Virus record (IMG/VR): IMGVR_UViG_3300023257_000007
Coordinates: 62,001 to 126,000 of that record
Length of the DNA stretch: 64,000 nucleotides
Strand: one strand, 5' to 3'
In this document: in pieces, positions 15,986 through 61,614 of the stretch
Position numbering within the stretch: the stretch's first letter is position 1
How the letters are laid out: each line of letters begins with the position of its first letter
Program-made: the position numbers and the translations under genes
The notes under the pieces: generated by a model
Told to the model about the DNA's origin: nothing
The model's input: only the letters and a program-made list of their open reading frames with translations
The model's database searches: none

Positions 15986-16330
15986 ATGATTAAAAATTTT
16001 AAAATGTTTGATAATATTGATAAATTCACAGAAATTATCAAATCAGAAATTAAATTAAGTGAAGAAAAATTCAAACTTAAAATTGAACCAGAAGATCAAG
16101 AAAAAGAAATAGATATTATAATTAAAACTTTTGGTGAATATGATTTCAGTAATGGTATTTCAAGTGAAATATATCAAAAATTGTTTAATGAAATAGTTAC
16201 AAAAGTAAATAAATTATTAGATAAACAATTAAATTATTATTTTTGCAATACTCCTGAAGGAGAAACAAAAACTAGGTATAATTGTCATTTACACAGTGTA
16301 ATATTTAGATTATTTATCTTGCTTCAATAA
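15986..16330 (+). CDS. Hypothetical protein (MIKNFKMFD N-terminus)
   Basis: 114-aa ORF. Confidence 0.65.
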   Translation: MIKNFKMFDNIDKFTEIIKSEIKLSEEKFKLKIEPEDQEKEIDIIIKTFGEYDFSNGISSEIYQKLFNEIVTKVNKLLDKQLNYYFCNTPEGETKTRYNCHLHSVIFRLFILLQ

Positions 16331-16339
16331 AATTAAAAA

Positions 16340-16606
16340 TTAAAAATCTCGTTCATATCTCCTAATTTTTTCTTTCCCAATTCTAATATCAAACTCTTTA
16401 AGAAATGAATTTGGTATTTTAATGTCATACTCTTCAAAATTTTTAAGTATCTCTAATCTCGTAAAATCACACTCTGAAATTCCTATACTCCACTCTTTTA
16501 CCCAAAGTCCCCAACTCTTTTTACTTTTAATAACTCCATTTAATATGTTTGGATGTTTAGTATAAATTGGTTTATCTTTATATAAACCATTATCAAATTC
16601 TTTCAT
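16340..16606 (-). CDS. Hypothetical protein
   Basis: 88-aa ORF; the frame stays open about 200 nt further upstream without an ATG. Confidence 0.55.
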   Translation of the reverse strand: MKEFDNGLYKDKPIYTKHPNILNGVIKSKKSWGLWVKEWSIGISECDFTRLEILKNFEEYDIKIPNSFLKEFDIRIGKEKIRRYERDF

Positions 16607-16822
16607 ACAGATTTTACAATTTTTACCATTAATATCAAATATAATTTCAGGATTATACGTTCCAGAAAAGGAAAGTATATTGCATCGGTAAGATTTAAGA
16701 AAGAAACAAAATATTTCATTAAAACTATTTGAATGTTTTTGTTTCTTCTTATTTTTTCTTGTTAGGCCTTTCTTATAAAGACCATCATTGCTTCCAGCAT
16801 TTTCATAATCTTTTATTTATTT

Positions 16823-17053
16823 TTAGGTTGATATTTCAAACGTAGACCATGAAATTTTTCCAACATTTGAATATAAATTGTCTAATTTTTCAGCAAAATA
16901 TTCAAACCATTGTTTATCTTCTTTTGTTAAAGTATATCCATTTTCTAATTTACTTTTATAATCTTTAATAACATTTAAGTCATTAAGAAATAAATAAAAT
17001 GTTTCAGAATCAAGATTTTCTACTATTTTATTAATATTATCTAAATCTTTCAT
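16823..17053 (-). CDS. Hypothetical protein directly downstream of tRNA-Ala
   Basis: 76-aa ORF whose ATG abuts the tRNA 3' end. Confidence 0.6.
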   Translation of the reverse strand: MKDLDNINKIVENLDSETFYLFLNDLNVIKDYKSKLENGYTLTKEDKQWFEYFAEKLDNLYSNVGKISWSTFEIST

Positions 17054-17054
17054 G

Positions 17055-17126
17055 TGGAGCCTACGGGAATCGAACCCGTGTCTTCTGAGTGCAAGTCAGA
17101 AATAATAGCCTCTATACGAAGGTCCC
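17055..17126 (-). tRNA. trnA: tRNA-Ala(TGC)
   Basis: GGGACCT/AGGCTCC acceptor with G3:U70 (one A:C mismatch); anticodon arm TCTGA-CTTGCAC-TCAGA; GGTTCGATTCC. Confidence 0.92.
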
Positions 17127-17133
17127 ATTTTTG

Positions 17134-17207
17134 TACTCCCGATTGGACTCGAACCAACAACTTCTGCCATGTAACGGCAGCACTCTACGCAATTGAGCTA
17201 CAGGAGC
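17134..17207 (-). tRNA. trnV: tRNA-Val(TAC)
   Basis: GCTCCTG/CGGGAGT; CTGCC-GTTACAT-GGCAG; GGTTCGAGTCC. Confidence 0.92.
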
Positions 17208-17212
17208 GTTTG

Positions 17213-17286
17213 TAGTCTCGATGAGATTCGAACTCATGACCTCTTGCACGTCAAGCAAACACTCTAACCAACTGAGCTACGAAACT
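17213..17286 (-). tRNA. trnV: tRNA-Val(GAC)
   Basis: AGTTTCG/CGAGACT; TAGCTCAGTTGGTTAGAGT D-arm; TTGC-TTGACGT-GCAA; GAGTTCGAATCTC. Confidence 0.93.
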
Positions 17287-17290
17287 ATAG

Positions 17291-17361
17291 TACTCTCGAA
17301 GGGACTCGAACCCCCACTAAGGGTTTAGAAGACCCTTGTGCATCCATTACACCACGAAAGC
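17291..17361 (-). tRNA. trnR: tRNA-Arg(TCT)
   Basis: GCTTTCG/CGAGAGT; AGGGT-CTTCTAA-ACCCT; GGGTTCGAGTCCC. Confidence 0.92.
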
Positions 17362-17362
17362 A

Positions 17363-18055
17363 TTAACACATTTTCAATTTTTTAATTATATCACTAATAG
17401 TGCCTTTTGAAGCACAAAAATATTCAGCAATTTTAACTTGTTTAATATTTTGATTAAAATACATATCATAAACTTTTTCTCTATCAATTTTTGGTTGTTT
17501 ATATTTCAAATTATTAGATTTTTCTATAATTTCATCAAGATTTTCGTAGAAAAATTTTGAATCTGTATGTTTTATTGTGTGACAATTTCTACATATTATT
17601 TTACATTTATCTAATTCATTTTGTACTTTTTCACTCAAATCTTTTATACTATCAAATCTACTAGTTATATCACTTAAAATAAAATCCTTATTTCTTTCAT
17701 GATGAAAATTTAATGACGAATTACATTTATTATATCCACATATATAACATTTATCATCACCTAAATATTTTAAATAAATGTGTTTGTTGTGTCTCTTATT
17801 AGAAACTTTGCCAATTTTTTCATGTAATTCTTGATGACAATTTTGACAATATAATTCACACTTTTTTAACTCTTTCTCTATTATATTCCAGCTATAATTT
17901 CTTAAAACATTTAATGATTCTTTTTTATCATCTATATGATGAAAACACAATTTTAATATATTATCTTCACCACACATTTTACAAGAACCACCAAGTAATT
18001 TAACTGCTTTGTACTTTTTAGCAAAAACTAATATTTTTGTTGATAATTTTTTCAT
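17363..18055 (-). CDS. Double-HNH homing endonuclease-like protein with C-terminal HTH, inserted in the tRNA cluster
   Basis: Two CxxC..L.FHH..C...CxNCH..H units plus QVKIAEYF..SKGTISDII; real start is the ATG at 18055 (the track's 18100 start runs through a palindrome). Confidence 0.85.
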   Translation of the reverse strand: MKKLSTKILVFAKKYKAVKLLGGSCKMCGEDNILKLCFHHIDDKKESLNVLRNYSWNIIEKELKKCELYCQNCHQELHEKIGKVSNKRHNKHIYLKYLGDDKCYICGYNKCNSSLNFHHERNKDFILSDITSRFDSIKDLSEKVQNELDKCKIICRNCHTIKHTDSKFFYENLDEIIEKSNNLKYKQPKIDREKVYDMYFNQNIKQVKIAEYFCASKGTISDIIKKLKMC

Positions 18056-18104
18056 GTTCGAGGTTTTAATTTTATATATTAAAATTAAAACCTCGAACAT
18101 GAAA
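18050..18104 (-). promoter_or_regulatory. Perfect 25-bp hairpin with late promoter TATATA at the apex; stem includes the HNH start codon
   Basis: tttcatgttcgaggttttaatttta / taaaattaaaacctcgaacatgaaa, 5-nt loop tatat. Confidence 0.85.
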
Positions 18105-18108
18105 TTTG

Positions 18109-18182
18109 AGCGAATGAACGGATTCGAACCGTCACCTCAACTTTGGAAGAGTTATATGCTAACCATTAAACACCACATTCGC
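18109..18182 (-). tRNA. trnG: tRNA-Gly(TCC)
   Basis: GCGAATG/CATTCGC, U discriminator; TAACT-CTTCCAA-AGTTG; CGGTTCGAATCCG. Confidence 0.94.
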
Positions 18183-18192
18183 TTATTTCTTG

Positions 18193-18265
18193 ATCCCCCT
18201 GTCGGAATCGAGCCGACTTCCCCGATTTACAAGACCGGACATAATCCATTAAATGCTTAGGAGGA
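18193..18265 (-). tRNA. trnT: tRNA-Thr(TGT)
   Basis: TCCTCCT/AGGGGGA; CCGGT-CTTGTAA-ATCGG; T-loop CTCGATT (C at position 54). Confidence 0.88.
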
Positions 18266-18273
18266 ATATATAG

Positions 18274-18353
18274 AACCCCAAGTGGGACTCGAACCCACAT
18301 TTTCAATTCCAATTACCGATAACTGTTTCGAAGACAGAACGGATTACTGAGGT
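18274..18353 (-). tRNA. Atypical tRNA-like gene with Arg(TCG) anticodon; no canonical D-arm, expanded variable region
   Basis: ACCTCAG/TTGGGGT acceptor; CTGT-CTTCGAA-ACAG anticodon arm; GTGGG-TTCGAGT-CCCAC T-arm; only about 8 nt between acceptor and anticodon stems. Confidence 0.7.
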
Positions 18354-18362
18354 ATTTATTTG

Positions 18363-18436
18363 TATAAGCGGTGAGAGTCGAACTCACAATAATCCTCAGT
18401 CCAAGTGAGGCAACCACGCCAATGGATCGCGCCTAT
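18363..18436 (-). tRNA. trnP: tRNA-Pro(TGG)
   Basis: ATAGGCG/CGCTTAT; CCTCA-CTTGGAC-TGAGG; GTGAG-TTCGACT-CTCAC. Confidence 0.88.
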
Positions 18437-18467
18437 ATTATTACAAAAAATCAAAGAACTTACTCCA

Positions 18468-18513
18468 GAAAACAAAAAACCTCAACCAATGGTTTGAAAC
18501 ACTGGTCGAGGTT
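18468..18513 (-). terminator. Intrinsic terminator (candidate attenuator) between leader ORF and first tRNA
   Basis: AACCTCGACCA/TGGTTGAGGTT 11-bp stem (one G:U) followed by TTTTGTTTT on the minus strand, about 30 nt before tRNA-Pro. Confidence 0.8.
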
Positions 18514-18538
18514 GTGGTTTGATATATGGAGGATTAAA

Positions 18539-18646
18539 TTACAAATCCTCAAACTCTAACAGTGTAGGTATAACGGTGCCGGCCACGGGTCTCGTCGGAG
18601 TCCCTGTGCGTACTACTACTGCCATTATGTTAAAGTTTAAATTCAT
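18539..18646 (-). CDS. Candidate leader peptide MNLNFNIMAVVVRTGTPTRPVAGTVIPTLLEFEDL (35 aa; not in ORF track)
   Basis: ATG with A-rich upstream, TATATA at 18672-18677; GC-rich core codons; stop 25 nt before the terminator stem. Confidence 0.7.
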   Translation of the reverse strand: MNLNFNIMAVVVRTGTPTRPVAGTVIPTLLEFEDL

Positions 18647-18744
18647 TTTTATATCAATTTTTTCGTATTATTATATATTGACCGTAAAAAGTCAAATTTT
18701 TCTATTTTTATATTTATCACAAAAGTAGTTAAAAGTTTTTAAAA

Positions 18745-19575
18745 TTAAAAATTTTTTGTCATTTTATTTTCAAAAAAGGAAAACAACTTTGATATATATC
18801 GAGAATAATTTTTTATTTGATTGTTGTAGATTTTTAAAAAGTTATCTATAAATAATTTTTGTTCTTTTTTAGAAGAATTATTTATAAATAATTCTTCTTC
18901 TTCACCATGTTTTAATTTTTTTAATAATTCAAACGCTGATAAAAATTTGTTCAATTTAAGTTCTGATAAATCATTAAAAAGTTGCAATAAATTTATATCC
19001 TTTAAATAATAAAAATTTTGATAAAAATCGCTTTTTTTAACTAAATTATCAATTGTTTCATTTTCATTTAATTCATAATTTTTTATTTCGTAAACAATTT
19101 TACTAAAATCCGCTTTTACTTCAGCTGACGATAAAGAATAAAACACATCTATGATTGTAGATATTTGTTTATCATTTTTAAAAAAATCATACATTGAAAT
19201 TATTGACATTTCATCAACACTTGTTAATTCTTTGCCTTTATTTTTCACCCAATCATAAGCATGAAACAATTCGTGATTTAATAATCCATGAGTTGTCTTA
19301 TATGAATCTAAAACCAAATATATAATCGAACCATTTGGAATATATTCTGATTTATGTTGATCAAATGATGAAAATCTATTATTCAATTTTGCATAATCTT
19401 CTTTGAATTCTATAATTATTTTGGATATACCTATATTAAGTATTTTAACATCTATTTCTTCAATATTTTTTAAATCCTCTTTATTTTCAACATAATTTAT
19501 TATATAAGTAGTTAATTCTTCAACTTCTGTTGAATATCCTGATCTTTCTATAATAAAATTACCAAAATTTAACAT
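18745..19575 (-). CDS. Hypothetical protein with HExxH motif (possible zincin-like metallopeptidase)
   Basis: LLNHELFHAYD; N-terminus MLNFGNFIIE; TATATA at 19581-19586. Confidence 0.65.
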   Translation of the reverse strand: MLNFGNFIIERSGYSTEVEELTTYIINYVENKEDLKNIEEIDVKILNIGISKIIIEFKEDYAKLNNRFSSFDQHKSEYIPNGSIIYLVLDSYKTTHGLLNHELFHAYDWVKNKGKELTSVDEMSIISMYDFFKNDKQISTIIDVFYSLSSAEVKADFSKIVYEIKNYELNENETIDNLVKKSDFYQNFYYLKDINLLQLFNDLSELKLNKFLSAFELLKKLKHGEEEELFINNSSKKEQKLFIDNFLKIYNNQIKNYSRYISKLFSFFENKMTKNF

Positions 19576-19605
19576 ATGTTTATATATTAAAAATTTTTTG
19601 TCATT

Positions 19606-19941
19606 TTATTTTCTTTCTTCTGGGTCACCACAAAAAACACAACATTCATCACTATAATATCCATTCACATAAACATATACACATTTATCAATAGGATTAT
19701 CTATATGATTACAATCCCATCCCCAATAAGCGCCATAATATGGATCTCCTATATCTTCTAATTTAATAGATTCATCATCTCTTTCTTTTAAAACATATTC
19801 TTTAATCCATTCTGATTTCTCTTTAAGGATTTTTTCTCTTTCTACTTTTTTCTTAGTTTCAGTGTCATGTTTAATTGCTTCTTTTTCTTCAAGAAATAAT
19901 TGACCATCTTCTGTTTGCCATGCATCTACTTTATTTATCAT
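19606..19941 (-). CDS. Hypothetical protein with C-terminal Cys cluster
   Basis: 111 aa, ends CVFCGDPEERK; ATGA overlap with upstream gene. Confidence 0.7.
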   Translation of the reverse strand: MINKVDAWQTEDGQLFLEEKEAIKHDTETKKKVEREKILKEKSEWIKEYVLKERDDESIKLEDIGDPYYGAYWGWDCNHIDNPIDKCVYVYVNGYYSDECCVFCGDPEERK

Positions 19942-20717
19942 TTTATTAATTCTTTAATATTAACATTTTCATCTTGTAAATTAAACCAATTTCTTAATTT
20001 CTTTCTTAAAAATAATTCATCCTTAGATCTTTCAATATCTTCTTCGGCTTTCTGTATCTCAACTTTATGTTTATCTACATCTGTATTATACAAACCAAGT
20101 AATTGATTACTAATAGAAATTATTTTTTTCTCATTACCAACTTGATCTTCAGAATCAACTAAACATTTACTTATAATTTCATTATCTTTCCACCAATCCT
20201 TACTCTTAATCTTTTCAATCTCATCATCGTTGAAGGATATATCATTAACATACAAATTATCAAGTTTTAACATAACTTCCAATTCACCAGAATTTCTCTT
20301 CAACCATTTTGAATAATCTTTCATAAGTTTAGGATTCCTAATTATATTCAAATCAGAAGGACTAATAAACTTTTCTAAGTTCTCTCTATCATCATCAATA
20401 TCATGTTTTTCTAAAATACCCAAATATAATCTTACAAAATGTAAATATATTCCTTTATGTTTGTGATATTCACCATCAGTACCTTCATCTTCCCAGACAT
20501 TATATCCTTTTGTTGGCATGTAAAAGCAATTTGATTCTGGATGCCCTATAGAACCACCAGTATGACATCTTTTAACAAGTCCTTCCTCGATCAATTCATC
20601 TATGTATAAAGCATATTCACTAGATTTTACTTTTACAATTCCTGACAATCCTTGACCACTTTGAACTTGTACGTCAATAATAGTTTTATAGACATCTGAT
20701 TTAGTTATTTTACCCAT
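19938..20717 (-). CDS. Hypothetical protein
   Basis: 259-aa ORF in operon. Confidence 0.72.
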   Translation of the reverse strand: MGKITKSDVYKTIIDVQVQSGQGLSGIVKVKSSEYALYIDELIEEGLVKRCHTGGSIGHPESNCFYMPTKGYNVWEDEGTDGEYHKHKGIYLHFVRLYLGILEKHDIDDDRENLEKFISPSDLNIIRNPKLMKDYSKWLKRNSGELEVMLKLDNLYVNDISFNDDEIEKIKSKDWWKDNEIISKCLVDSEDQVGNEKKIISISNQLLGLYNTDVDKHKVEIQKAEEDIERSKDELFLRKKLRNWFNLQDENVNIKELIK

Positions 20718-34478: not shown

Positions 34479-36200
34479 TTAATTCAAAAAACCATTTTTT
34501 AAAATACCCCACTCAAAACATATATGACCAGAATTATTTATTCTGTAAATACCCCTTTCTAACATTATATCATGCTCTGTTCTATTTGCATCATAACCAT
34601 CTTTAACCAATGTTTGTTTTCTATAATTATATCTATGCCTTCTAACACCATCAACTATGTAATGATAACCTGGTTTTGTTGTGTGACTCCTATTAAAATT
34701 TAAATTATCATAAAGATTGCCTTTACTCCAACTTCTATCAGCATAAGAAACTATTTTTTTCGGATCATAATTTTTAATAAAATATTTAAACAATTTACTA
34801 GCACCACCAACAATATTTGTGTTTAATTTGTTGCAAAACCTTAATAACTCAAAATCATATTTTTTAATAACACCTATACCCAATCTATTCTTACCAAACG
34901 TCATTAAAGAAACTAATTCATTTTCATAATATAATCCTAATTTAACACTAGATCCAACAAAACCTTGTATATGATTATTATCTAAAAATTCTCTTATTAG
35001 TTTATTATCGTTAATTTCCTTTATTTGTGTTTTTCTAGCATAAATTTTATTTGGTGTTTTACCTAATTTATTTAATATCATTGATTTAACTATATTTTGT
35101 TTATATTTCCAATCATCTTCATAAATATGGATTAATTGAATATCCTTTTCTTCACATTTTTCTGTTTTATTTAAATGATATCTATCAGATTTATATAATT
35201 CATTATGCCAATATAAACCATTAAATTCAAAAGCTAATTTTAAATCTGGTAAATAAATGTCTAATTCTAATGGCTTTATTATATTTCTTTTATTATTTAA
35301 AATTGTTTTGTCATAATTCGATTTAATATAATTTAAGAAATCAATTTCAAGTCCAGAAACTGATTTTAAAATAGGATTGCATTTAGTACATAACAAAGTA
35401 TTAGATCTTCGTCTACTATTCAAAAGAACATAACTTATTTCAAATTCGTGTCCTTTTTCACACATCATTAAATATTTTTTTTCTTCTAAATTTAAACTTA
35501 TTACATCATAATCTTCATAATATTTTAAATATTTATTCATGATTGTTTTTCTTAAACTTTTAATCATTCTGTCTTTTAAATCAATATTATGTAATGGTAC
35601 AATCACACCATATTTTTCTTTCATTGTTCTTTGTCTTTTAATTTTAACTAAATCCAATTTTGAAACATTATCAACTCCATATTTACTCAAACACGTTTCT
35701 TTATATCTATTATAAATTTCAACTGATTTTAATGGACTACTGACATTATAATTATCCTTTAGTGTTTTTAAAGATTTTTTATGAATTTCTTCATTTTGAA
35801 TAGGTGAATTATAACCATATTTTTTAATATTAGTTTTGATAATCTTTTCTTTTACTAAAATATTTTCTGATGGTGTTTTTGTACCAAATTTATCTAAACA
35901 TGTTTGCATTCTTTTATTTTTAACATGATTACTTTTATTCATGCATTTCTTAGAACAAAAAGTATAATATCCAATATTAGAATTCTTAAATTTGACAAAA
36001 TTACCACATTCACATATTACAATATTTTTAATATCATTATACCAATGATAAACTTGTTGCTTAAATGGTAAATCATCTAAACCATTTTCAATTACATATT
36101 TTTGTATTTCTTCTAGTATACTAGTAAAATACTTTTCGAGATAATTCTTTCTGAACATTTTACCAGATGAATCTAGATTTTCACTAAAAATACTTTTCAT
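34479..36200 (-). CDS. Putative homing endonuclease (CL.KYG repeats plus Hef/Vsr-like PD-(D/E)xK and GNAT-like C-terminal part)
   Basis: CECG..YTFCSKKC, CLDKFG/CLSKYG repeats, ELDIYLP..AFEFNGLYWH, IHIYEDDW, FL..NHIQG, ELLRFC, GGASKL, SYADR. Confidence 0.85.
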   Translation of the reverse strand: MKSIFSENLDSSGKMFRKNYLEKYFTSILEEIQKYVIENGLDDLPFKQQVYHWYNDIKNIVICECGNFVKFKNSNIGYYTFCSKKCMNKSNHVKNKRMQTCLDKFGTKTPSENILVKEKIIKTNIKKYGYNSPIQNEEIHKKSLKTLKDNYNVSSPLKSVEIYNRYKETCLSKYGVDNVSKLDLVKIKRQRTMKEKYGVIVPLHNIDLKDRMIKSLRKTIMNKYLKYYEDYDVISLNLEEKKYLMMCEKGHEFEISYVLLNSRRRSNTLLCTKCNPILKSVSGLEIDFLNYIKSNYDKTILNNKRNIIKPLELDIYLPDLKLAFEFNGLYWHNELYKSDRYHLNKTEKCEEKDIQLIHIYEDDWKYKQNIVKSMILNKLGKTPNKIYARKTQIKEINDNKLIREFLDNNHIQGFVGSSVKLGLYYENELVSLMTFGKNRLGIGVIKKYDFELLRFCNKLNTNIVGGASKLFKYFIKNYDPKKIVSYADRSWSKGNLYDNLNFNRSHTTKPGYHYIVDGVRRHRYNYRKQTLVKDGYDANRTEHDIMLERGIYRINNSGHICFEWGILKNGFLN

Positions 36201-39200: not shown

Positions 39201-40163
39201 TCCGTCACCAATTATATCAATTTTACCGTTTGGATAATCTGCACTCATTAATAAATCTTCATTATATGAGCAGAAAATACCTGTTTTATCTGTGTCTGCA
39301 TTAATATTACTCTTAATGTAAAGATCTCTATTATTTAAATCTCTAAAGTAAGGTAATAGTGATGTATCATAATATCCTAATATTGTTATGTTAGTTTCAG
39401 ATATGAAATCACTAACTGTTCCTTTAATTAAACCTGTAGTATCAAAATAAGAACTCCATGTTGTATCAACTGATAATGAATTATAATCTGTCCAATCACC
39501 TTCAACTATAATAACTGTAACTAAATAATCTGAAATCCAGTCAGTTGGATTAATATAAGTAGGAACTTTAGTTCTACCACCATACCACCATTCGGCAGTA
39601 ACATCAAATCCTGTTAAACTTGATTTAAACATAAATACTGTAACAGCCTTGTTGTTAAGGTTTGTAAAATTAAGTAATCTATCATCTGACCATGTTGTTA
39701 GACTCTTAAGATAATCTTGGAATGCAATATCATCTCTTTCCCAGAAATCTTGTCTATTGAATATCTTACTATATGGTATAGTAACTTTTGTACCTTGTGA
39801 AGTTGGATAGTTTGCATATTGAGATGCAACTGACATTGAATCATATTCAATTAGATCTCTCGTATCATTAGTTGACAGTAAATTAAGTGCCCAAATCGGA
39901 CCACTCTGTAACATTTTTAAACATGTTCTGTGGAAATAAGAACCTTTGTTTTCTAATTGTCTATCTAAATCACCGAACACAGTTGCAAACGTAGTTGGAT
40001 TGTCTATATAAACTGGCTTATTGATAGGCCCTTTCTTTGAAAAACCTGGTACTAGATTTATAAGAATATCTTGTACTGGTAACTCAATAGGTGACTGATT
40101 TATTTCTTCTATGAAAATGTCAGGTCTTTTATATTTTCCTAAATCTTTTTGTTGAATTGGCAT
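36285..40163 (-). CDS. Contractile tail sheath protein (gp18-like), enlarged to 1292 aa
   Basis: N-terminal RPDIFIEE..VPGFSKKGP.NKP; C-terminal WTIMAGVTNGR, ANPI, HSREVL..LE, YQWRFNT..R; TATATA at 40186-40191. Confidence 0.9.
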   Translation of the reverse strand: MPIQQKDLGKYKRPDIFIEEINQSPIELPVQDILINLVPGFSKKGPINKPVYIDNPTTFATVFGDLDRQLENKGSYFHRTCLKMLQSGPIWALNLLSTNDTRDLIEYDSMSVASQYANYPTSQGTKVTIPYSKIFNRQDFWERDDIAFQDYLKSLTTWSDDRLLNFTNLNNKAVTVFMFKSSLTGFDVTAEWWYGGRTKVPTYINPTDWISDYLVTVIIVEGDWTDYNSLSVDTTWSSYFDTTGLIKGTVSDFISETNITILGYYDTSLLPYFRDLNNRDLYIKSNINADTDKTGIFCSYNEDLLMSADYPNGKIDIIGDGLVGTQLDSINFMSYNQSVTETVSLANKFLDAESNVFANYDADLTAAWNASYGRTTGGFTNWYVNDVVTGDTSFENLYITSIVSGDTLASSTVVSAITSINGATITFNKSFTGVDSTLEYTVVYPSVSAPGINNFTLLDPNGTAVSGITITTDVLATINNQAFSFGADPYFVADTKQTLDTGTTTVQFEPLTLVTTGSTVGRVDVVYMLKGSEDILTYEGTESTPGALAQPTFSNTSAIVLGYVELLYVSGTTTSTYNPIVLSNVYQTMGLTIEHSTPNSTLTLTFPNATGTSYNSVRELQYHDELSTTLANNKAVIINSGTGYKHQISTNYVITDDPYTITLTNITNPAEFYNGSEILIFYTDDEFVMHATNSTDRMITIDAPLETLSTSGITGENAAGVVAKYSTMYLDFYSGEIANDDYFVDANASTNKIYLKMWIDSSDNLTVDFVENASSAGSSDPDPVYNWSTIYAYALSVVSDIGSYRQTVEIESFVTSNYPANVLTIKVDRTRYAELKRGDMLEAYIPTTDPTDPDATYNSSTGLYSNGRVPKRLTRILNTTVDPSDSTLKIIETDASIKITDNDAIPSATATTADWMTTQYSSIDSYVSTYKGIDIRPFKISSLSMPDGTDARQNTILTVLDSTTNLSKALVNKNKITWRYLVDSFGLGLAPYSVSVGGVSSNVIPKQQLVDLCGEKLNCLGFINMPSLRDFKKSVNPNFMEVDAAGEQTGAVSTYFIMKGGNEDLSPPYLYDFAGGVGATCVGYFFPYVRVSDNGVPKYVPPSSYAATTYMQKFTGGPGLQPWTIMAGVTNGRVNGIGGTEMDFSNTDLENMFQMGANPITYKRNAGYCINSENTAQVFPYSSLSVIHSREVLIELENQLYDMLLRYQWRFNTPEIRAEIKFRADEICKSLQDSDALYDYKNVMDITNNTNYIIDLQMGVLDTYIEIIKGMGIIVNNITILKKGDIESGGFL

Positions 40164-40306: not shown

Positions 40307-41497
40307 TTAAATTAAATTTCTCAAATGATAATTGAAAACTAACTTAACCTCTTCTGAATATTTTTTTGGATATACTACAGAATCATGAATAGTAAAGATC
40401 TTAATGTGTGGATATTTCTTTGCAATATCGCTCACAACCTTACCATAAATAAAATCACTTTCCATTCTCTGCAATTTATGACTCAACGATTTATAAGTAT
40501 CGTCTAAACTTTTTAATTCTTTTATATACTCTAAAACACTCGGGTATAATTCACCAAAAATGTTATTTTCTCTGTTTCCATTATTATTTCCAAATAAAAC
40601 CTTAAACATCATCAACTTAGCATCAGTCCTTGTTTTAAGTTCAAGTGGAAATCTTTCAGTAAATTCATCATATATTAAACCATTTTTAACAATATCAATA
40701 AATCTTATAACTTCTTCATTTAATTCATCTATCTCTTGTTTTAAATATAAACCAAAAAAGAAAGGTTGTGAATTTTTAATATCAACTTCATCAACAGGCT
40801 CACCATCAATCTTCAAAAATCTATTTCTAATTTCTTTTTTAAGTATCGTAAAATTAGTGTGCATTCTACCATAACCATCAAATTTAAAAAATATATTGCC
40901 TGTTTGTATTCCATCGACACTATTATGATTACGTAAATATTTACTATTCTCCATTTCACCATTTTCCCATAAATCATCAATATAATCTATCGACTTTTGA
41001 TAATCTATCTGTACATAATATAAATAATCAATTAATTTCTTTCTAATTTCAATATCTATTGGACTATTAACATAGGTTGTAAATGATCTCTCTAAATAAT
41101 CCTTTTGATATTTTTTCATTAAGATTTTATCATCAACCACACATTTAGTTATTTCTAAGTCTGTTATATTTAATTTATATGTTTTGGCTTTTTTTGAAAC
41201 ATAATAATTAGAGACCAAAGTCATAAATCTTTTTTCAATTAAATAATTAATATAATAATTATAATATTTTCCATATTTATTTCTTAATAATACAGACCAT
41301 AAATTAAATTTAACTTCATTAGTAAAAAAATATTTTATTACTAACTCATGAATTATATTTATTAAGTAATCTGTTTTTAAATTAATACCATTATATGGTA
41401 TCTTCTTTATTCCAGTTAAATATTCATATTCTTTTGGAATAAATTGATATAAATATTGTCTATCTTTTGGTAAAATTATATTTGTTTTATGGAACAT
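40307..41497 (-). CDS. Minimal family-A (PolA-fold) polymerase-like protein without exonuclease domains
   Basis: YGRMHT, VDIKNSQP (motif A), RTDAKLMMFKVLFG (motif B), HKLQRMESD, TIHDSV (motif C). Confidence 0.7.
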   Translation of the reverse strand: MFHKTNIILPKDRQYLYQFIPKEYEYLTGIKKIPYNGINLKTDYLINIIHELVIKYFFTNEVKFNLWSVLLRNKYGKYYNYYINYLIEKRFMTLVSNYYVSKKAKTYKLNITDLEITKCVVDDKILMKKYQKDYLERSFTTYVNSPIDIEIRKKLIDYLYYVQIDYQKSIDYIDDLWENGEMENSKYLRNHNSVDGIQTGNIFFKFDGYGRMHTNFTILKKEIRNRFLKIDGEPVDEVDIKNSQPFFFGLYLKQEIDELNEEVIRFIDIVKNGLIYDEFTERFPLELKTRTDAKLMMFKVLFGNNNGNRENNIFGELYPSVLEYIKELKSLDDTYKSLSHKLQRMESDFIYGKVVSDIAKKYPHIKIFTIHDSVVYPKKYSEEVKLVFNYHLRNLI

Positions 41498-41606
41498 TAA
41501 TGAAATTATTTTTTCTTTTGAATTTAAATTATTATTTTAGAAAAGTTTATGGTTAAATTCTTAAGATGCATCAAAAGCTATTTCCACATGAAACGAAGAT
41601 TTGGTG

Positions 41607-41614
41607 CAAAATTA
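41607..41614 (-). promoter_or_regulatory. Possible Bacteroidota-type -7 promoter element TAnnTTTG
   Basis: TAATTTTG in an intergenic region upstream of the PolA-like gene; short motif in AT-rich DNA. Confidence 0.35.
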
Positions 41615-41692
41615 TGATAGTATTCTAATTAATTAATTTTTTTCTTTAAGAAAATTTTCTTATTTTAGAAGAACATTAAAACGAAAAAAATT

Positions 41693-42283
41693 ATGGATGA
41701 AAATATAAAAAAATCATTAGAATCTTTAAGTAAATCTATTTGTTCAAAACTTGTAGATAAAAATATAAATTTAGATGAATTAATTTCTAATCATTTATCA
41801 ACTATTAAATTGCTTTATCCTGATGTTGAAAATTTAGAAAAAATATTTACTGATATTGTTCTTAAAGAATCAAAAAAGTATTATGAATCAAAGAAATTTA
41901 AAGTAAGATGTATAAAAACACATAATACATTTTCACATAAATATAATAGAGGTTCAATTTATACTGTAATTGATGAATTTAAACAAGTTGGTATACATAA
42001 TAATGATGATGAAGAACATTATTATAAAATTAAAGATGATAATAATAAAATTGTATTAGTTGAGCCAAATCATTTTATTAAAATTGAAGATGAAGAAAGT
42101 TTAGCAGATATGAAAATAGAATATGTAGATGATGAATTAATAATTTCTACTTATGATGGACAAGCATTAAAAATAGAAAGAAAAAATATTGATATTTTTT
42201 TAAGAGAATTACATAAATATTCTTCATCGTATATTAAAAATGATAAATTAGAAAAAACTTTAATATTTTTTGAAAGTAAATAA
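41693..42283 (+). CDS. Hypothetical protein
   Basis: 196-aa ORF. Confidence 0.7.
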   Translation: MDENIKKSLESLSKSICSKLVDKNINLDELISNHLSTIKLLYPDVENLEKIFTDIVLKESKKYYESKKFKVRCIKTHNTFSHKYNRGSIYTVIDEFKQVGIHNNDDEEHYYKIKDDNNKIVLVEPNHFIKIEDEESLADMKIEYVDDELIISTYDGQALKIERKNIDIFLRELHKYSSSYIKNDKLEKTLIFFESK

Positions 42284-42327
42284 AGACAACAAATTAAAAA
42301 TAAATAAATTAAATAAATTAAATTACT

Positions 42328-46597: not shown

Positions 46598-47194
46598 ATG
46601 GGAAAAAATAAACATGAAGTCAAATTCAAAGAAGCAACTGGACAAGAATTTTCTAAATTTTATCAAGATCAAATGCCTAGATTAACTTGGCATCTTTCAA
46701 ATTATACAAAAGATTTTGAAGTAGCAGAAGATTTTGCAAATGACGCATTTGAACAAGCCTTAAAAAAAATTGAAACTTATGATAAAAATAAGTCTCAAAT
46801 TCAAACTTGGTTATACACAATTGCTAGACACATTGTTATTCAATCTTGGAATAAAAAGCAAAAAATGCCATCCGTCTCAATTGATAAAGAATATGACGTA
46901 AACCTTTCATTAAGTACTTTTTTACCTTATGAAGATGGAAAAGAAGATTTAGAAAAGTATAATACTTATGTTGAAAAGGCTAAGATTATAAAAGAAGTTA
47001 TTAAAAATCTTCCTCCTAAATACAAAGAAGTCATGGAATTAAGAGAATTAGATAATATGCAATATAAGGAAATTGCGAAGTATCTTAAGAGAAACGAATC
47101 TACTGTTAAATCTCAAATTCGAAAAGGACGTGAATTAATAAGAGATAAAGTGCAGAAAAAATTCGATTACATTGATAAACATGGACTGGAATAA
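46598..47194 (+). CDS. ECF-type sigma-70 family RNA polymerase sigma factor
   Basis: Region 2 AEDFANDAF..A..KI.TYD..TWLYTIARH; region 4 LPPKYKEVMELR..YKEIA.YL..ESTVKSQIRKGRELI. Confidence 0.92.
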   Translation: MGKNKHEVKFKEATGQEFSKFYQDQMPRLTWHLSNYTKDFEVAEDFANDAFEQALKKIETYDKNKSQIQTWLYTIARHIVIQSWNKKQKMPSVSIDKEYDVNLSLSTFLPYEDGKEDLEKYNTYVEKAKIIKEVIKNLPPKYKEVMELRELDNMQYKEIAKYLKRNESTVKSQIRKGRELIRDKVQKKFDYIDKHGLE

Positions 47195-50776: not shown

Positions 50777-51073
50777 ATGGATTTTAAAAACGCATTTATT
50801 GACGACTTACTTTATAGTATGAATGAATATTTACCTAAATTAAAAACAATTGCATGGTATCCAGAACCTTTCACAATTATTCTAATTTTAGGAGAAAATG
50901 TTTATGATTTTGATTATGAAAATAAAATGAAATTATACGAAATAACTGAAGAACTTTGTGATGAATATGAATATAATTTCGAAAAAATAAAAGAAAAATT
51001 AAATGTTATTGAATCAATTATATCAGAAGGTAAACACACACTTAATTATAATCATATAGACGAAAATGAGTAA
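50777..51073 (+). CDS. Hypothetical protein
   Basis: 98-aa ORF. Confidence 0.65.
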   Translation: MDFKNAFIDDLLYSMNEYLPKLKTIAWYPEPFTIILILGENVYDFDYENKMKLYEITEELCDEYEYNFEKIKEKLNVIESIISEGKHTLNYNHIDENE

Positions 51074-60777: not shown

Positions 60778-61614
60778 ATGAAACTAAAATCCTTTATGCC
60801 AACAATTTGTCCGGAATGCGAAAGTAAACTCGTTATTGAAGAAGGTAAAAAAGAGGATGTAATTAGACTTATGTGCAAAAATCCTAAATGTAAAGGAACT
60901 GCTATTAAGAAATTACAAAAAGGTATCAAAGCTTTAGAAATAAGAAATTTAGGACCCTCCACAATAAAAAAACTTTATTTATCAGGGATTGAAAATAGTT
61001 TTGATTTATTTAATCCAGAAATATTTAACGAAGAAAATCTTTGTAATGGATACTTTAAAGAAGGAAGAGCATTAGAAAAAATAATGGATTCAGTTGATAA
61101 TGTTGAATCAATTGCAATTGAAAAAGCCATTCTATCACTTCAAATAATGGTTGAAAAAGAAGAAGGTGAAGGTTTTATATCTATTGGTGAATCTTTATCA
61201 GAACAAATTGGTAGAATGATGTCAGGTGTTGATTTTGATTATGATGGTTTAAGTATTCAAGTAAGAGAAGAAGTACAAAACGAAAAGAGTCCACTTTATC
61301 TTAAAATTAAAAGTGCTCTCCAAGAATTTGAAAATAATGATATTGAAATAGATAAATTTAAAAAAGTTGAACCATTAGATTTATCAAAACTTAAAAAAGT
61401 TAAAAAACAAGTAACACTTATTGGCGAACCAACAACTATTGATATGACAACAGAAGAATTCTTAAACAAATTAGAATGGGGTGTTGTAGATATTAAAAAT
61501 AGTGATATGTTAATCGTTGAAAATAAAAATATAGAAAACGAAATTGTTGAATACGCAAAAGACGAAGGTATTAAGATAATGACATTTAAACAAATTAAAT
61601 TATTATTTCTATAA
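60778..61614 (+). CDS. Stand-alone C-terminal part of NAD-dependent DNA ligase (Zn finger + HhH + degenerate BRCT)
   Basis: PTICPECESKL..MCKNPKC, ALEIRNLGPSTIKKL, IGESLS, C-terminal BRCT-like AK..GIKIM; no adenylation domain. Confidence 0.72.
   Translation: MKLKSFMPTICPECESKLVIEEGKKEDVIRLMCKNPKCKGTAIKKLQKGIKALEIRNLGPSTIKKLYLSGIENSFDLFNPEIFNEENLCNGYFKEGRALEKIMDSVDNVESIAIEKAILSLQIMVEKEEGEGFISIGESLSEQIGRMMSGVDFDYDGLSIQVREEVQNEKSPLYLKIKSALQEFENNDIEIDKFKKVEPLDLSKLKKVKKQVTLIGEPTTIDMTTEEFLNKLEWGVVDIKNSDMLIVENKNIENEIVEYAKDEGIKIMTFKQIKLLFL

What the first reader, a model, noticed from the sequence alone, without database searches (positions are those of the whole stretch)
18050..18104. 25-bp perfect hairpin with the late promoter at its apex and the HNH start codon in its stem
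Seen: 25 perfect base pairs with a 5-nt loop; the TATATA motif (18073-18078) spans the apex and the 3' arm on the minus strand contains the HNH ATG (18055) and its leader. Established: T4-like phage homing endonucleases (I-TevI, MobE) are silenced in read-through transcripts by hairpins that sequester the initiation region and are expressed from a late promoter starting inside the hairpin. Inference: read-through from the tRNA operon cannot translate the nuclease, while late transcripts lack the 5' arm. The hairpin may also shield tRNA-precursor processing.
Basis: partly seen in the sequence, partly recalled or inferred. Interest (0 to 1): 0.7.

Follow-up and report, generated by a model that had tools for sequence, protein, structure and literature searches.

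The report
Promoter-in-hairpin switch on a phage nuclease gene
A selfish nuclease gene wedged into a transfer-RNA gene array of a giant uncultivated phage is preceded by a perfect 25-base-pair hairpin that buries its start codon and carries the phage's virion-gene promoter box in its loop; relatives keep this arrangement through compensating mutations, so it is most likely the timing switch already known from phage T4, here in a new phage group.

Summary
Window 18050-18104 is a perfect 25-bp inverted repeat with a 5-nt loop. It is the longest perfect hairpin in the 344,634-nt phage record, where simulated genomes reach 11-15 bp. It is identical in four independent assemblies.

The true start codon of the 230-aa tandem-HNH/HTH nuclease (ATG at 18055) lies in the 3' arm. 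The loop and arm tips spell TAATATATAA. This box is the record's dominant upstream motif. It lies about 20-24 nt before the capsid, portal and tail-sheath genes, so it is a candidate late (virion-gene) promoter.

In 20 of 23 distinct homologous loci (36-64% protein identity) a hairpin ends 0-4 nt before the ATG or covers it. The stem sequences differ but stay complementary, and about 18 loci carry the box in the loop. Seventeen of the 23 loci sit in tRNA arrays on the same strand.

The best explanation is the T4-type switch known from I-TevI, segB, mobE and gene e. Read-through RNA folds and hides the start codon. RNA started at the loop promoter lacks the 5' arm and is translated.

No transcript data exist, and no gp55-type late sigma factor was found. 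I class it as a new member of a known kind, of moderate interest.

The parts
18050..18104 (-). Whole hairpin: 25 perfect base pairs and a 5-nt loop. On the gene's strand the 5' arm is 18104-18080, the loop 18079-18075 and the 3' arm 18074-18050.
   Evidence: Identical in four independent assemblies.
18072..18081 (-). Class A promoter-like box TAATATATAA at the hairpin apex, oriented towards the HNH gene, 16 nt before the ATG. Only the asymmetric loop sets its direction; the other strand reads TTATATATTA.
   Evidence: ATATATA lies within 70 nt upstream of 126 of 478 ORFs, a 6-fold enrichment. 74% of strict boxes lie in the 11% of the record that is intergenic. Box-to-ATG spacing peaks at 19-22 nt. 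The box precedes the capsid, portal and sheath genes.
18053..18055 (-). True start codon of the HNH gene, base-paired inside the 3' arm.
   Evidence: Homologue N-termini align to this ATG. The 230-aa product is the protein on public record.
18098..18100 (-). In-frame upstream ATG in the 5' arm, a by-product of the palindromic CATG. It gives a spurious 245-aa ORF call and is not the start.
   Evidence: No homologue has the 15-aa extension.
17363..18055 (-). Free-standing homing-endonuclease-like gene of 230 aa: two tandem HNH (Cys4 plus HH...N...H) modules and a C-terminal resolvase-type helix-turn-helix.
   Evidence: phrog_2255 HNH endonuclease, E = 1.6e-28. Invariant C/H/N columns occur twice in 43 homologues. 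The C-terminal 40 aa match the gamma-delta resolvase DNA-binding domain, E = 5.7e-5.
18062..18068 (-). Predicted transcription start zone of the box-driven transcript. This is an inference, not an observation. Such RNA lacks the 5' arm.
   Evidence: Inferred from the usual 6-8 nt gap between a -10-type element and the start site. RNA from 18067 has its first 28 nt unpaired, while the read-through form folds to -35.4 kcal/mol.
18108..18182 (-). tRNA-Gly(UCC) directly upstream. Its 3' end is 3 nt from the base of the hairpin, and no CCA is encoded.
18192..18436 (-). Upstream part of the tRNA array: tRNA-Thr (18192-18265), a degenerate tRNA-like element (18274-18353) and tRNA-Pro (18362-18436).
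17054..17361 (-). Downstream part of the array: tRNA-Arg (17290-17361, beginning 1 nt after the HNH stop codon), two tRNA-Val and tRNA-Ala. Their transcription has to pass through the HNH gene.

Best explanation
The hairpin is the regulatory front end of a free-standing tandem-HNH homing-endonuclease cassette that sits inside a phage tRNA gene array.

Transcripts that enter from the upstream tRNA genes contain both arms. They fold into a very stable stem that buries the AUG and its whole short, Shine-Dalgarno-less leader. Ribosomes therefore cannot start, and the nuclease is not made from tRNA-precursor RNA.

The loop carries the phage's virion-gene (late-type) promoter box. RNA polymerase starting a few nucleotides downstream of the box makes an mRNA that begins inside the 3' arm and has no 5' arm. 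This RNA is unstructured around the AUG and can be translated. It probably also carries transcription on into the four downstream tRNA genes.

Shown: the structure, its conservation and covariation, the identity of the box with the genome-wide upstream motif, and the genomic context.

Inferred: the transcription start site, the existence of read-through RNA, the translational block, and the late timing.
For: 1. Structure. The stem has 25 perfect bp, far beyond chance. The HNH start region has the lowest folding energy (-31.8 kcal/mol) of all 478 ORF starts; the median is -4.6 and the next lowest -21.9.

2. Conservation with compensation. In 20 of 23 distinct loci encoding homologues (36-64% identity) a hairpin ends 0-4 nt before the ATG or overlaps it.
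- Each locus's own two arms pair at a mean of -13.6 kcal/mol, against -5.0 (sd 2.7) for arms taken from different loci. The own 3' arm is the best of 20 partners in 15 of 20 loci.
- In a centre-anchored gapless comparison 79% of cells pair, against 58.5 +/- 1.9% (maximum 64%) in 1000 column shuffles.
- Where the stem extends over the start codon, the 5' extension changes to match. The window has TTTCAT/ATGAAA, L087 has CATAAT/ATTATG and L096 has GGACA/TGTCC.

3. The box.
- It is 6-fold enriched upstream of ORFs, mostly intergenic, and has a preferred spacing to the ATG.
- It lies about 20-24 nt before the Gp23-type capsid, gp20-type portal and tail-sheath genes.
- Of 135 boxes in the record, only the HNH box has strongly complementary flanks (-31.0 kcal/mol; median -3.3). 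The runner-up (-12.2) precedes an unrelated HNH gene in another tRNA array.
- The same box-in-hairpin precedes a PG_binding_1 (lysin-like) gene in a 633-kb relative, echoing T4 gene e.

4. Context. Seventeen of 23 loci lie in tRNA arrays, and all 106 detected tRNA genes are on the HNH strand. In the window nothing terminator-like lies between tRNA-Gly and the hairpin.

5. Consequence for the RNA. RNA from 18067 has a free initiation region, while the read-through form folds to -35.4 kcal/mol.

6. Precedent. [quoted passage not shown] It is proposed for segB, which also sits in a tRNA cluster (PMC2988022, PMC3014915, PMC2330249).
Against: - No RNA run holding this phage could be listed. No start site, no read-through transcript and no timing has been observed.
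- A strong terminator-like hairpin with a U-run (18478-18513) lies upstream of the tRNA array, and I could not identify the array's own promoter. The amount of read-through is therefore unknown.
- The box is assigned as a promoter, and as late, only from its position and the genes it precedes. It also precedes some non-virion genes, for example an IMPDH-like gene.
- No gp55-type late sigma factor was found. The one sigma factor seen is of the sigma-70 r2+r4 type. The record is only 48% complete.
- G-U pairs are too few to show that selection acts on sense RNA rather than on DNA.
- In L094 the hairpin lies wholly upstream of the box and cannot occlude the AUG. L091 and L102 have no hairpin. The hairpin may therefore have another or an additional role.
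- At 25 perfect bp the stem is longer than occlusion needs; relatives manage with 13-21 bp.
Confidence: 0.65

Rival explanations
1. The hairpin is mainly an RNA-processing, stability or insulation element of the tRNA precursor. It could be a double-strand-specific (RNase III-type) cleavage site, or a block to 3' exonucleases that separates tRNA-Gly from the nuclease mRNA. On this view start-codon burial is incidental.
For: - The stem starts 3 nt after the tRNA-Gly 3' end, and no CCA is encoded.
- 25 perfect bp is long enough for RNase III-type enzymes (established knowledge).
- In L094 a homologous hairpin is retained right after a tRNA although it no longer touches the AUG.
- Many other box promoters in this record are preceded by a separate hairpin.
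Against: - In relatives the stems are 13-21 bp, often with bulges, which is too short for a conserved RNase III site.
- The position of the 3' arm is fixed relative to the ATG (0-4 nt). The distance from the upstream tRNA end to the ATG varies from 51 to about 300 nt among loci with a nearby upstream tRNA, so the stem is not fixed relative to that tRNA.
- Lineage-specific extensions pair with the start codon itself.
- Hairpins are kept in loci with no tRNA detected in the flanks (L090, L096, L103, L191, L193).
Confidence: 0.15
2. The palindrome works at the DNA level. It could be an inverted-repeat operator bound by the nuclease's own helix-turn-helix domain, which would sit on the promoter and repress it as I-TevI does at its operator. 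It could also act as a cruciform. The GTTCGA/TCGAAC stem base would be the half-sites and would resemble the tRNA T-arm motif that SegB recognises.
For: - The protein ends in a resolvase-type HTH.
- The repeat is centred exactly on the promoter box.
- GTTC(G/A) begins the 5' arm in 8 of 21 hairpins, and ATTCG in 3 more.
- I-TevI represses its own late promoter through an operator that resembles its homing site, and SegB recognises GGTTCRANTCC.
- Wobble pairs do not discriminate RNA from DNA.

This reading is compatible with the best explanation as an added layer.
Against: - Complementarity runs through the whole arms (13-25 bp), and the interior sequences are not conserved but co-vary. That is the signature of a nucleic-acid stem, not of two short protein half-sites.
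- The stem-base sequence is not universal in the family.
- Extensions that pair with the coding triplets after the ATG have no operator logic.
Confidence: 0.1
3. The hairpin is a transcription terminator or attenuator that stops tRNA-operon transcription before the nuclease gene.
For: It is a very stable stem directly after a tRNA gene. In several relatives the antisense direction reads stem plus T-run.
Against: - There is no U-run after the stem on the sense strand (AUGAAAAAA follows), and only UUU on the other strand.
- This record's evident terminators are G+C-rich stems with A- and T-runs.
- Termination here would also cut off the four downstream tRNA genes unless the loop promoter restarts transcription.
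Confidence: 0.05
4. It is a functionless recent inverted duplication or an assembly artefact.
For: The stem is perfect, which could mean it is young.
Against: It is identical in four independent assemblies. Equivalent hairpins with different sequences occur in 19 further loci from unrelated samples.
Confidence: 0.01

Closest known systems
Phage T4 I-TevI (also I-TevII and I-TevIII): hairpin plus late or middle promoter control of intron-encoded homing endonucleases (Gott et al. 1988; reviewed in PMC2988022 and PMC3014915)
   Same: A stable RNA stem sequesters the translation initiation region on long early or middle transcripts. A promoter placed at or in the hairpin gives a late transcript that cannot form the stem and is translated. 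In both cases the cargo is a homing endonuclease.
   Different: - Here the gene is free-standing in a tRNA array, not in an intron.
- The nuclease is a tandem HNH with an HTH, not a GIY-YIG enzyme.
- The promoter box is TAATATATAA rather than TATAAATA, and it sits in the apical loop.
- No Shine-Dalgarno sequence is involved. Only the AUG and leader are buried.
- Nothing here has been tested experimentally.
Phage T4 segB, a GIY-YIG homing endonuclease gene inside the T4 tRNA gene cluster (PMC2330249)
   Same: - It is a homing endonuclease gene embedded co-directionally in a phage tRNA cluster and transcribed as part of the tRNA precursor.
- A predicted hairpin holds the initiation codon.
- The ORF end abuts the next tRNA, so tRNA processing defines the mRNA 3' end.
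- Here the stop codon is 1 nt from tRNA-Arg, and in five homologous loci the ORF overlaps the next tRNA.
   Different: The segB authors found no promoter near the hairpin. Here a promoter-like box is in the loop. The nuclease family is different. Cleavage of tRNA T-arm sequences is shown for SegB and is only a conjecture here.
Aeromonas phage Aeh1 mobE, a free-standing HNH endonuclease (Gibb and Edgell 2007 and 2009, cited in PMC2988022)
   Same: It is a free-standing HNH homing endonuclease whose ribosome-binding site is sequestered by an RNA hairpin, with late promoter control.
   Different: mobE is inserted in a ribonucleotide reductase gene. It belongs to another HNH lineage with a single HNH module, uses a T4-type late promoter, and has a Shine-Dalgarno sequence that is sequestered.
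T4 gene e (lysozyme) and soc: late genes silenced on early read-through transcripts (PMC3014915)
   Same: The logic is identical. In a 633-kb relative a PG_binding_1 (lysin-like) gene carries the same box-in-hairpin (L094, ORF starting at 932).
   Different: The phage lineage and the promoter sequence differ. For T4 gene e the effect has been measured at about 100-fold.

Membership tests
T4-type occlusion switch (hairpin over the initiation region plus internal late promoter) | A stable RNA stem includes the translation initiation region (Shine-Dalgarno sequence and/or AUG). | tested here: met
   The AUG at 18055 and its 18-nt leader are all paired. The read-through form folds to -35.4 kcal/mol. 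No Shine-Dalgarno sequence is present. Only about 12% of ORFs in this record have one.
T4-type occlusion switch (hairpin over the initiation region plus internal late promoter) | A promoter lies inside or at the hairpin, so that its transcript lacks the 5' arm. | tested here: inconclusive
   The genome-wide upstream box lies in the loop, correctly oriented and at typical spacing. The transcription start itself could not be observed because no RNA runs were listed.
T4-type occlusion switch (hairpin over the initiation region plus internal late promoter) | That promoter belongs to the late (virion-gene) class. | tested here: inconclusive
   The box lies about 20-24 nt before the Gp23-type capsid, gp20-type portal and tail-sheath genes. 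A different motif (TTGAA-N6-7-TCCGTATATTT) precedes clusters of small ORFs. The box also precedes some non-virion genes. There are no timing data.
T4-type occlusion switch (hairpin over the initiation region plus internal late promoter) | The late promoter is TATAAATA and is read by a gp55-type sigma factor. | tested here: not met
   The box is TAATATATAA. TATAAATA shows no positional preference upstream of ORFs. T4 gp55, phrog_234 and phrog_12791 find nothing in the record, but the record is only 48% complete.
T4-type occlusion switch (hairpin over the initiation region plus internal late promoter) | The gene is also carried on longer transcripts from upstream, earlier promoters. | not testable with these tools
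   The context fits: a co-oriented tRNA gene lies 3 nt upstream with no terminator between. No RNA data are available.
T4-type occlusion switch (hairpin over the initiation region plus internal late promoter) | The stem is maintained in relatives by compensatory change. | tested here: met
   It is kept in 20 of 23 loci. Own-versus-cross arm test and column-shuffle test.
HNH homing endonuclease (free-standing) | An HNH (beta-beta-alpha-metal) catalytic motif is present. | tested here: met
   phrog_2255, phrog_3106 and phrog_35854 HNH endonuclease, E = 1e-28 to 1e-18. Two sets of invariant C..C, HH, N, C, H columns in 43 sequences. Pfam HNH is only faint.
HNH homing endonuclease (free-standing) | Mobility: alleles with and without the gene exist at the same site. 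| tested here: inconclusive
   No allele lacking the gene was found. There are no paralogues in the record. Homologues lie between different tRNA pairs in different phages, which fits mobility without proving it.
Intrinsic (Rho-independent) terminator | A G+C-rich stem followed by a U-run. | tested here: not met
   The stem has 7 G-C pairs out of 25. AUGAAAAAA follows on the sense strand and UUUGAGCG on the other. The terminator scan does not list it.
RNase III processing site | About 20 bp or more of near-perfect double-stranded RNA, conserved in relatives. | tested here: inconclusive
   The window's stem qualifies at 25 bp. Most relatives have 13-17 bp with bulges.

The most novel reading that the evidence does not exclude
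The hairpin with a loop promoter is a portable, self-insulating expression module that travels with homing-endonuclease cassettes specialised for tRNA arrays of giant phages.

- It keeps the nuclease silent on tRNA-precursor RNA.
- It restarts transcription for the tRNA genes cut off downstream.
- Its GTTCGA/TCGAAC stem base mimics the tRNA T-arm, which would be the nuclease's likely target. The nuclease's own helix-turn-helix domain would then bind there and shut the promoter, giving three layers of control in 55 bp.

Two observations would suggest that the design arose more than once. An unrelated HNH gene in a second tRNA array of the same phage, and a lysin-like gene in a relative, show the same architecture.
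Probability: 0.15. Interest if true: 0.7.

Novelty: new member of a known kind. Interest (0 to 1): 0.45.

Why it matters
- It extends a textbook T4 regulatory device beyond the T-even phages. Here it appears in uncultivated giant phages (records of 60 to 735 kb) from salt-lake, marine and other metagenomes, and in a system that does not rely on Shine-Dalgarno sequences.
- It gives a family-wide, covariation-supported example with more than 20 independent sequences. The T4 cases rest on a handful of close relatives.
- It supplies a candidate virion-gene promoter motif (TTTTAATATATAAAA) and a candidate early motif for a phage group with no transcription data.
- It corrects the gene start: 230 aa, not 245 aa.
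- It shows that this tandem-HNH family is a specialist of phage tRNA arrays. That matters for understanding how such arrays are shuffled between giant phages.

Tried and rejected
- Near-identical DNA search of 16000-20000 against the phage collection found nothing.
- Rfam gave only tRNAs. The hairpin drew sub-threshold microRNA-precursor matches, which are chance hits on any long AT-rich stem.
- Sigma-70 promoter and terminator scans were at or near shuffle level and did not list the hairpin as a terminator.
- No RNA runs could be listed. The DNA runs that hold the sequence are salt-lake and marine metagenomes. Laying contigs of four DNA runs showed no variants in the hairpin, so microdiversity gave no test.
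- Searches for an allele of the tRNA-Gly/tRNA-Arg junction without the nuclease gene, and for other phages with the same tRNA-Gly, returned only the same phage.
- There are no paralogues of this HNH gene in the record.
- MAFFT alignments anchor on the TATATA box and put the stems out of register, so RNAalifold predicted no pairs. I did not build a covariance model and used my own scripts instead: arm swapping, centre-anchored column shuffles, and control promoters.
- Comparing sense with antisense folding energy and counting G-U pairs did not separate RNA-level from DNA-level selection.
- Searches for a T4 gp55 homologue by protein and by two PHROG families were empty. This is not conclusive in a record that is 48% complete.
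- The four large phrog_3339 homing-endonuclease paralogues have the box but no enclosing hairpin, so the hairpin is not a general feature of nuclease genes here.
- A literature search found no description of this module in giant phages, within a limited library.

Full report
**1. What is there**

The window is bases 147476-211475 of a 344,634-nt IMG/VR virus record. It has 25% G+C and CheckV estimates it as 48% complete. DNA runs that hold the sequence come from salt-lake and marine metagenomes.

The record encodes a Gp23-type major capsid protein, a gp20-type portal and a very large tail sheath. Its virion core is therefore distantly T4-like.

At 18050-18104 there is a perfect inverted repeat of 25 bp with a 5-nt spacer.
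- It is the longest perfect hairpin in the whole record; the next is 18 bp.
- Simulated genomes of the same size and dinucleotide make-up reach only 11-15 bp.
- As minus-strand RNA it folds to -40.6 kcal/mol, z = -8.7.
- Four loci from independent samples are identical over several kilobases, so it is not an assembly artefact.

**2. The gene**

On the minus strand the hairpin is followed by a 230-aa ORF (18055 to 17363).
- PHROG profiles call it an HNH endonuclease, E = 1.6e-28.
- An alignment of 43 homologues shows the Cys/His/Asn pattern twice, which indicates tandem HNH modules.
- The last 40 residues match the gamma-delta resolvase helix-turn-helix, E = 5.7e-5.

A mechanical ORF call starts at an in-frame ATG at 18100 in the 5' arm. 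No homologue has that extension, and the 230-aa form is the one on public record.

The cassette fits tightly between tRNA genes on the same strand. tRNA-Gly ends 3 nt before the 5' arm, and tRNA-Arg starts 1 nt after the stop codon.

**3. The loop motif is the phage's main upstream motif**

I called 478 ORFs and compared the 70 nt upstream of each with the whole record.
- ATATATA is present before 126 ORFs, a 6-fold excess.
- The extended form is TTT(A/T)ATATATA(A).
- 74% of strict matches lie in the 11% of the record that is intergenic.
- The distance from box to ATG has a main mode of 19-22 nt and a minor class of 4-8 nt.
- The HNH box is TAATATATAA at 18081-18072 on the minus strand. It matches the consensus exactly, points at the gene and lies 16 nt from the ATG.
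- Because the arms are perfectly complementary, only the 5-nt loop is asymmetric. It sets the direction: the other strand reads TTATATATTA and does not fit the motif.
- The box lies about 20-24 nt before the capsid gene, the portal gene (from its likely GTG start) and the sheath gene.
- A different motif, TTGAA-N6-7-TCCGTATATTT, precedes clusters of small ORFs.

This is the usual picture of late and early promoter classes, so calling the loop box a late promoter is reasonable. It remains an inference. The box also precedes some non-virion genes. The only sigma factor found is of the sigma-70 r2+r4 type. No gp55-type factor was detected.

**4. The hairpin is special to this gene**
- Among 70 other ORFs with a box at similar spacing, the median folding energy of the start region is -4.3 kcal/mol. 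Where a hairpin exists, it lies upstream of the box in a terminator-then-promoter layout.
- Of 135 boxes, the HNH box has by far the most complementary flanks (-31.0 kcal/mol; median -3.3).
- The runner-up (-12.2) precedes an unrelated HNH-HTH gene (record 41591-42286) in a second tRNA array, with a 9-bp stem ending at its ATG.
- Among all 478 ORF starts the HNH start folds most stably.

**5. Relatives keep the design**

The protein has more than 130 relatives, many on contigs of 0.3-0.7 Mb. One is LR756503.1, a 735-kb record. I fetched 22 further distinct loci at 36-64% identity.
- In 20 of 23 loci, counting the window, a hairpin of 13-25 bp ends 0-4 nt before the ATG or overlaps it.
- The hairpin centre lies 21.5-26 nt from the ATG in 18 of these 20.
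- About 18 carry TATATA in the loop.
- The stems differ in sequence. The last 12 nt of the 3' arms are only 42% identical on average.
- Each 5' arm nevertheless pairs best with its own 3' arm in 15 of 20 loci. Own pairs average -13.6 kcal/mol and cross pairs -5.0, sd 2.7.
- In a gapless centre-anchored comparison 79% of cells pair, against 58.5 +/- 1.9% when 3' partners are shuffled within columns; no shuffle of 1000 exceeded 64%.

The most telling cases are the lineages in which the stem reaches over the start codon. There the 5' extension matches whatever follows:
- the window has TTTCAT with ATGAAA;
- L087, the closest relative at 64% identity, has CATAAT with ATTATG;
- L096 has GGACA with TGTCC.

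L010 keeps the hairpin without the box, and its locus (39% G+C) has no boxes elsewhere. The stem therefore seems to be the constant part, and the loop adapts to the resident phage.

Exceptions are L091 and L102, which have no hairpin, and L094, where the hairpin lies wholly upstream of a box that is 8 nt from the ATG.

**6. Context in relatives**

Seventeen of the 23 loci have tRNA genes in the fetched flanks. All 106 tRNA genes found are on the nuclease's strand. In nine loci the ORF ends within 35 nt of the next tRNA, and in five of these it overlaps that tRNA. This nuclease family is a specialist of phage tRNA arrays, so being carried on tRNA-precursor RNA is its normal condition.

**7. Mechanism**

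RNA from 18110 folds into the full stem at -35.4 kcal/mol with the AUG buried. RNA from 18067, a few nucleotides after the box, has its first 28 nt unpaired.

Few ORFs in this record have a Shine-Dalgarno sequence. Initiation must therefore depend on an open, A/U-rich start region, which a stem ending at the AUG removes.

I conclude that the element most likely works as the T4 occlusion switch. It would be silent on read-through RNA and translatable on RNA made from the loop promoter. That RNA would also serve the four downstream tRNA genes.

[quoted passage not shown] It also matches what was proposed for segB, a nuclease gene in the T4 tRNA cluster whose hairpin holds its Shine-Dalgarno sequence and AUG (PMC2988022, PMC3014915, PMC2330249).

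**8. What remains open**
- No transcript data could be found.
- Wobble pairs are too few to show that selection acts on RNA rather than DNA.
- A palindromic operator for the nuclease's own HTH, as in I-TevI autorepression, could coexist with the switch. The recurrent GTTC(G/A) at the stem base resembles the T-arm motif that SegB recognises. However, arm-long covariation is not what an operator predicts.
- A processing role (RNase III site or exonuclease block) fits the unusual 25-bp length here and the displaced hairpin of L094. It does not explain why the stem is positioned relative to the ATG, nor the codon-matching extensions.
- It is not an intrinsic terminator, because there is no U-run.

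**9. Verdict**

The mechanism is a known kind. What is new is the phage group, the nuclease family, the promoter sequence, the lack of a Shine-Dalgarno sequence, and the breadth of the comparative support.

Confidence in the mechanism is 0.65. Interest is 0.45.

Noticed in passing
window 18274-18353 (-): A degenerate tRNA-like element between tRNA-Thr and tRNA-Pro. The Rfam tRNA model scores 26.7 bits, below the gathering score of 29, and ARAGORN does not call it.
   Followed up: no
window 18478-18680 (-): A box variant (CAATATATAA, 18680-18671) is followed 24 nt later by a 35-codon ORF (18646-18539) with an unusually G+C-rich middle. After it comes the strongest terminator-like hairpin of the region (18513-18478, 14 bp plus a U-run), just upstream of the tRNA array. 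There is no Rfam match. The region folds with z = -4.0.
   Followed up: partly
G000 35.9-42.5 kb (L177/L178), minus strand: A second tRNA array holds three paralogous HNH-HTH genes of 195-231 aa (39249-39836, 40659-41354, 41591-42286), unrelated to the window's nuclease. All have the TATATA box upstream, and the last has a 9-bp stem enclosing the box and ending at its ATG.
   Followed up: partly
window 34479-36200 (-); L176:1788-3440 (-); L181:580-2226 (+); L182:16817-18418 (-): Four large paralogues (533-573 aa) of a phrog_3339 homing endonuclease, each with its own box 10-31 nt upstream but no enclosing hairpin. One lies directly after the tail-sheath gene and one directly after the capsid gene.
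   Followed up: partly
L181:17614-17688 (+) and L183:7629-7701 (+) in G000: Two tRNA genes with anticodon CUA (amber suppressors, which ARAGORN labels Pyl). This hints that TAG may be read as a residue in part of this phage. The HNH gene and the large ORFs examined here are open under table 11.
   Followed up: no
G000, for example L189:8405-16753 (+); window 50777-51073 and 60778-61614 (+): A second promoter-like motif, TTGAA-N6-7-T(C/T)CGTATATTT(G/A), lies 30-65 nt before many small ORFs that cluster together. It is a likely early class.
   Followed up: partly
L094:860-935 (633-kb contig, ENA ERZ19026863): A 270-aa protein with a PG_binding_1 domain (lysin-like) is preceded by a 19-bp hairpin with the TATATA box at its apex, ending 4 nt before the ATG. 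This parallels T4 gene e.
   Followed up: partly
window 17363-17365 with tRNA-Arg starting at 17361; L008, L010, L087, L101: The nuclease stop codon is 1 nt from the next tRNA gene. In five homologous loci the ORF end overlaps the tRNA by 1-21 nt, so RNase P cleavage would remove the stop codon. This was proposed for T4 segB (PMC2330249).
   Followed up: partly
window 17385-17393 (-): TGATATAAT, a perfect extended -10 of sigma-70 type, lies inside the last codons of the HNH gene, 23 nt before tRNA-Arg. It could drive the downstream tRNA genes, as promoters embedded in T4 seg and mob genes do. In 25% G+C DNA it may equally be chance.
   Followed up: no
window 46598-47194 (+): A phage-encoded sigma factor of 198 aa with sigma-70 regions 2 and 4 (ECF-like). 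A box lies 83 nt upstream.
   Followed up: no
L090:1286-1661 (-): A tmRNA gene lies next to the HNH homologue on a 65.8-kb phage-like contig.
   Followed up: no
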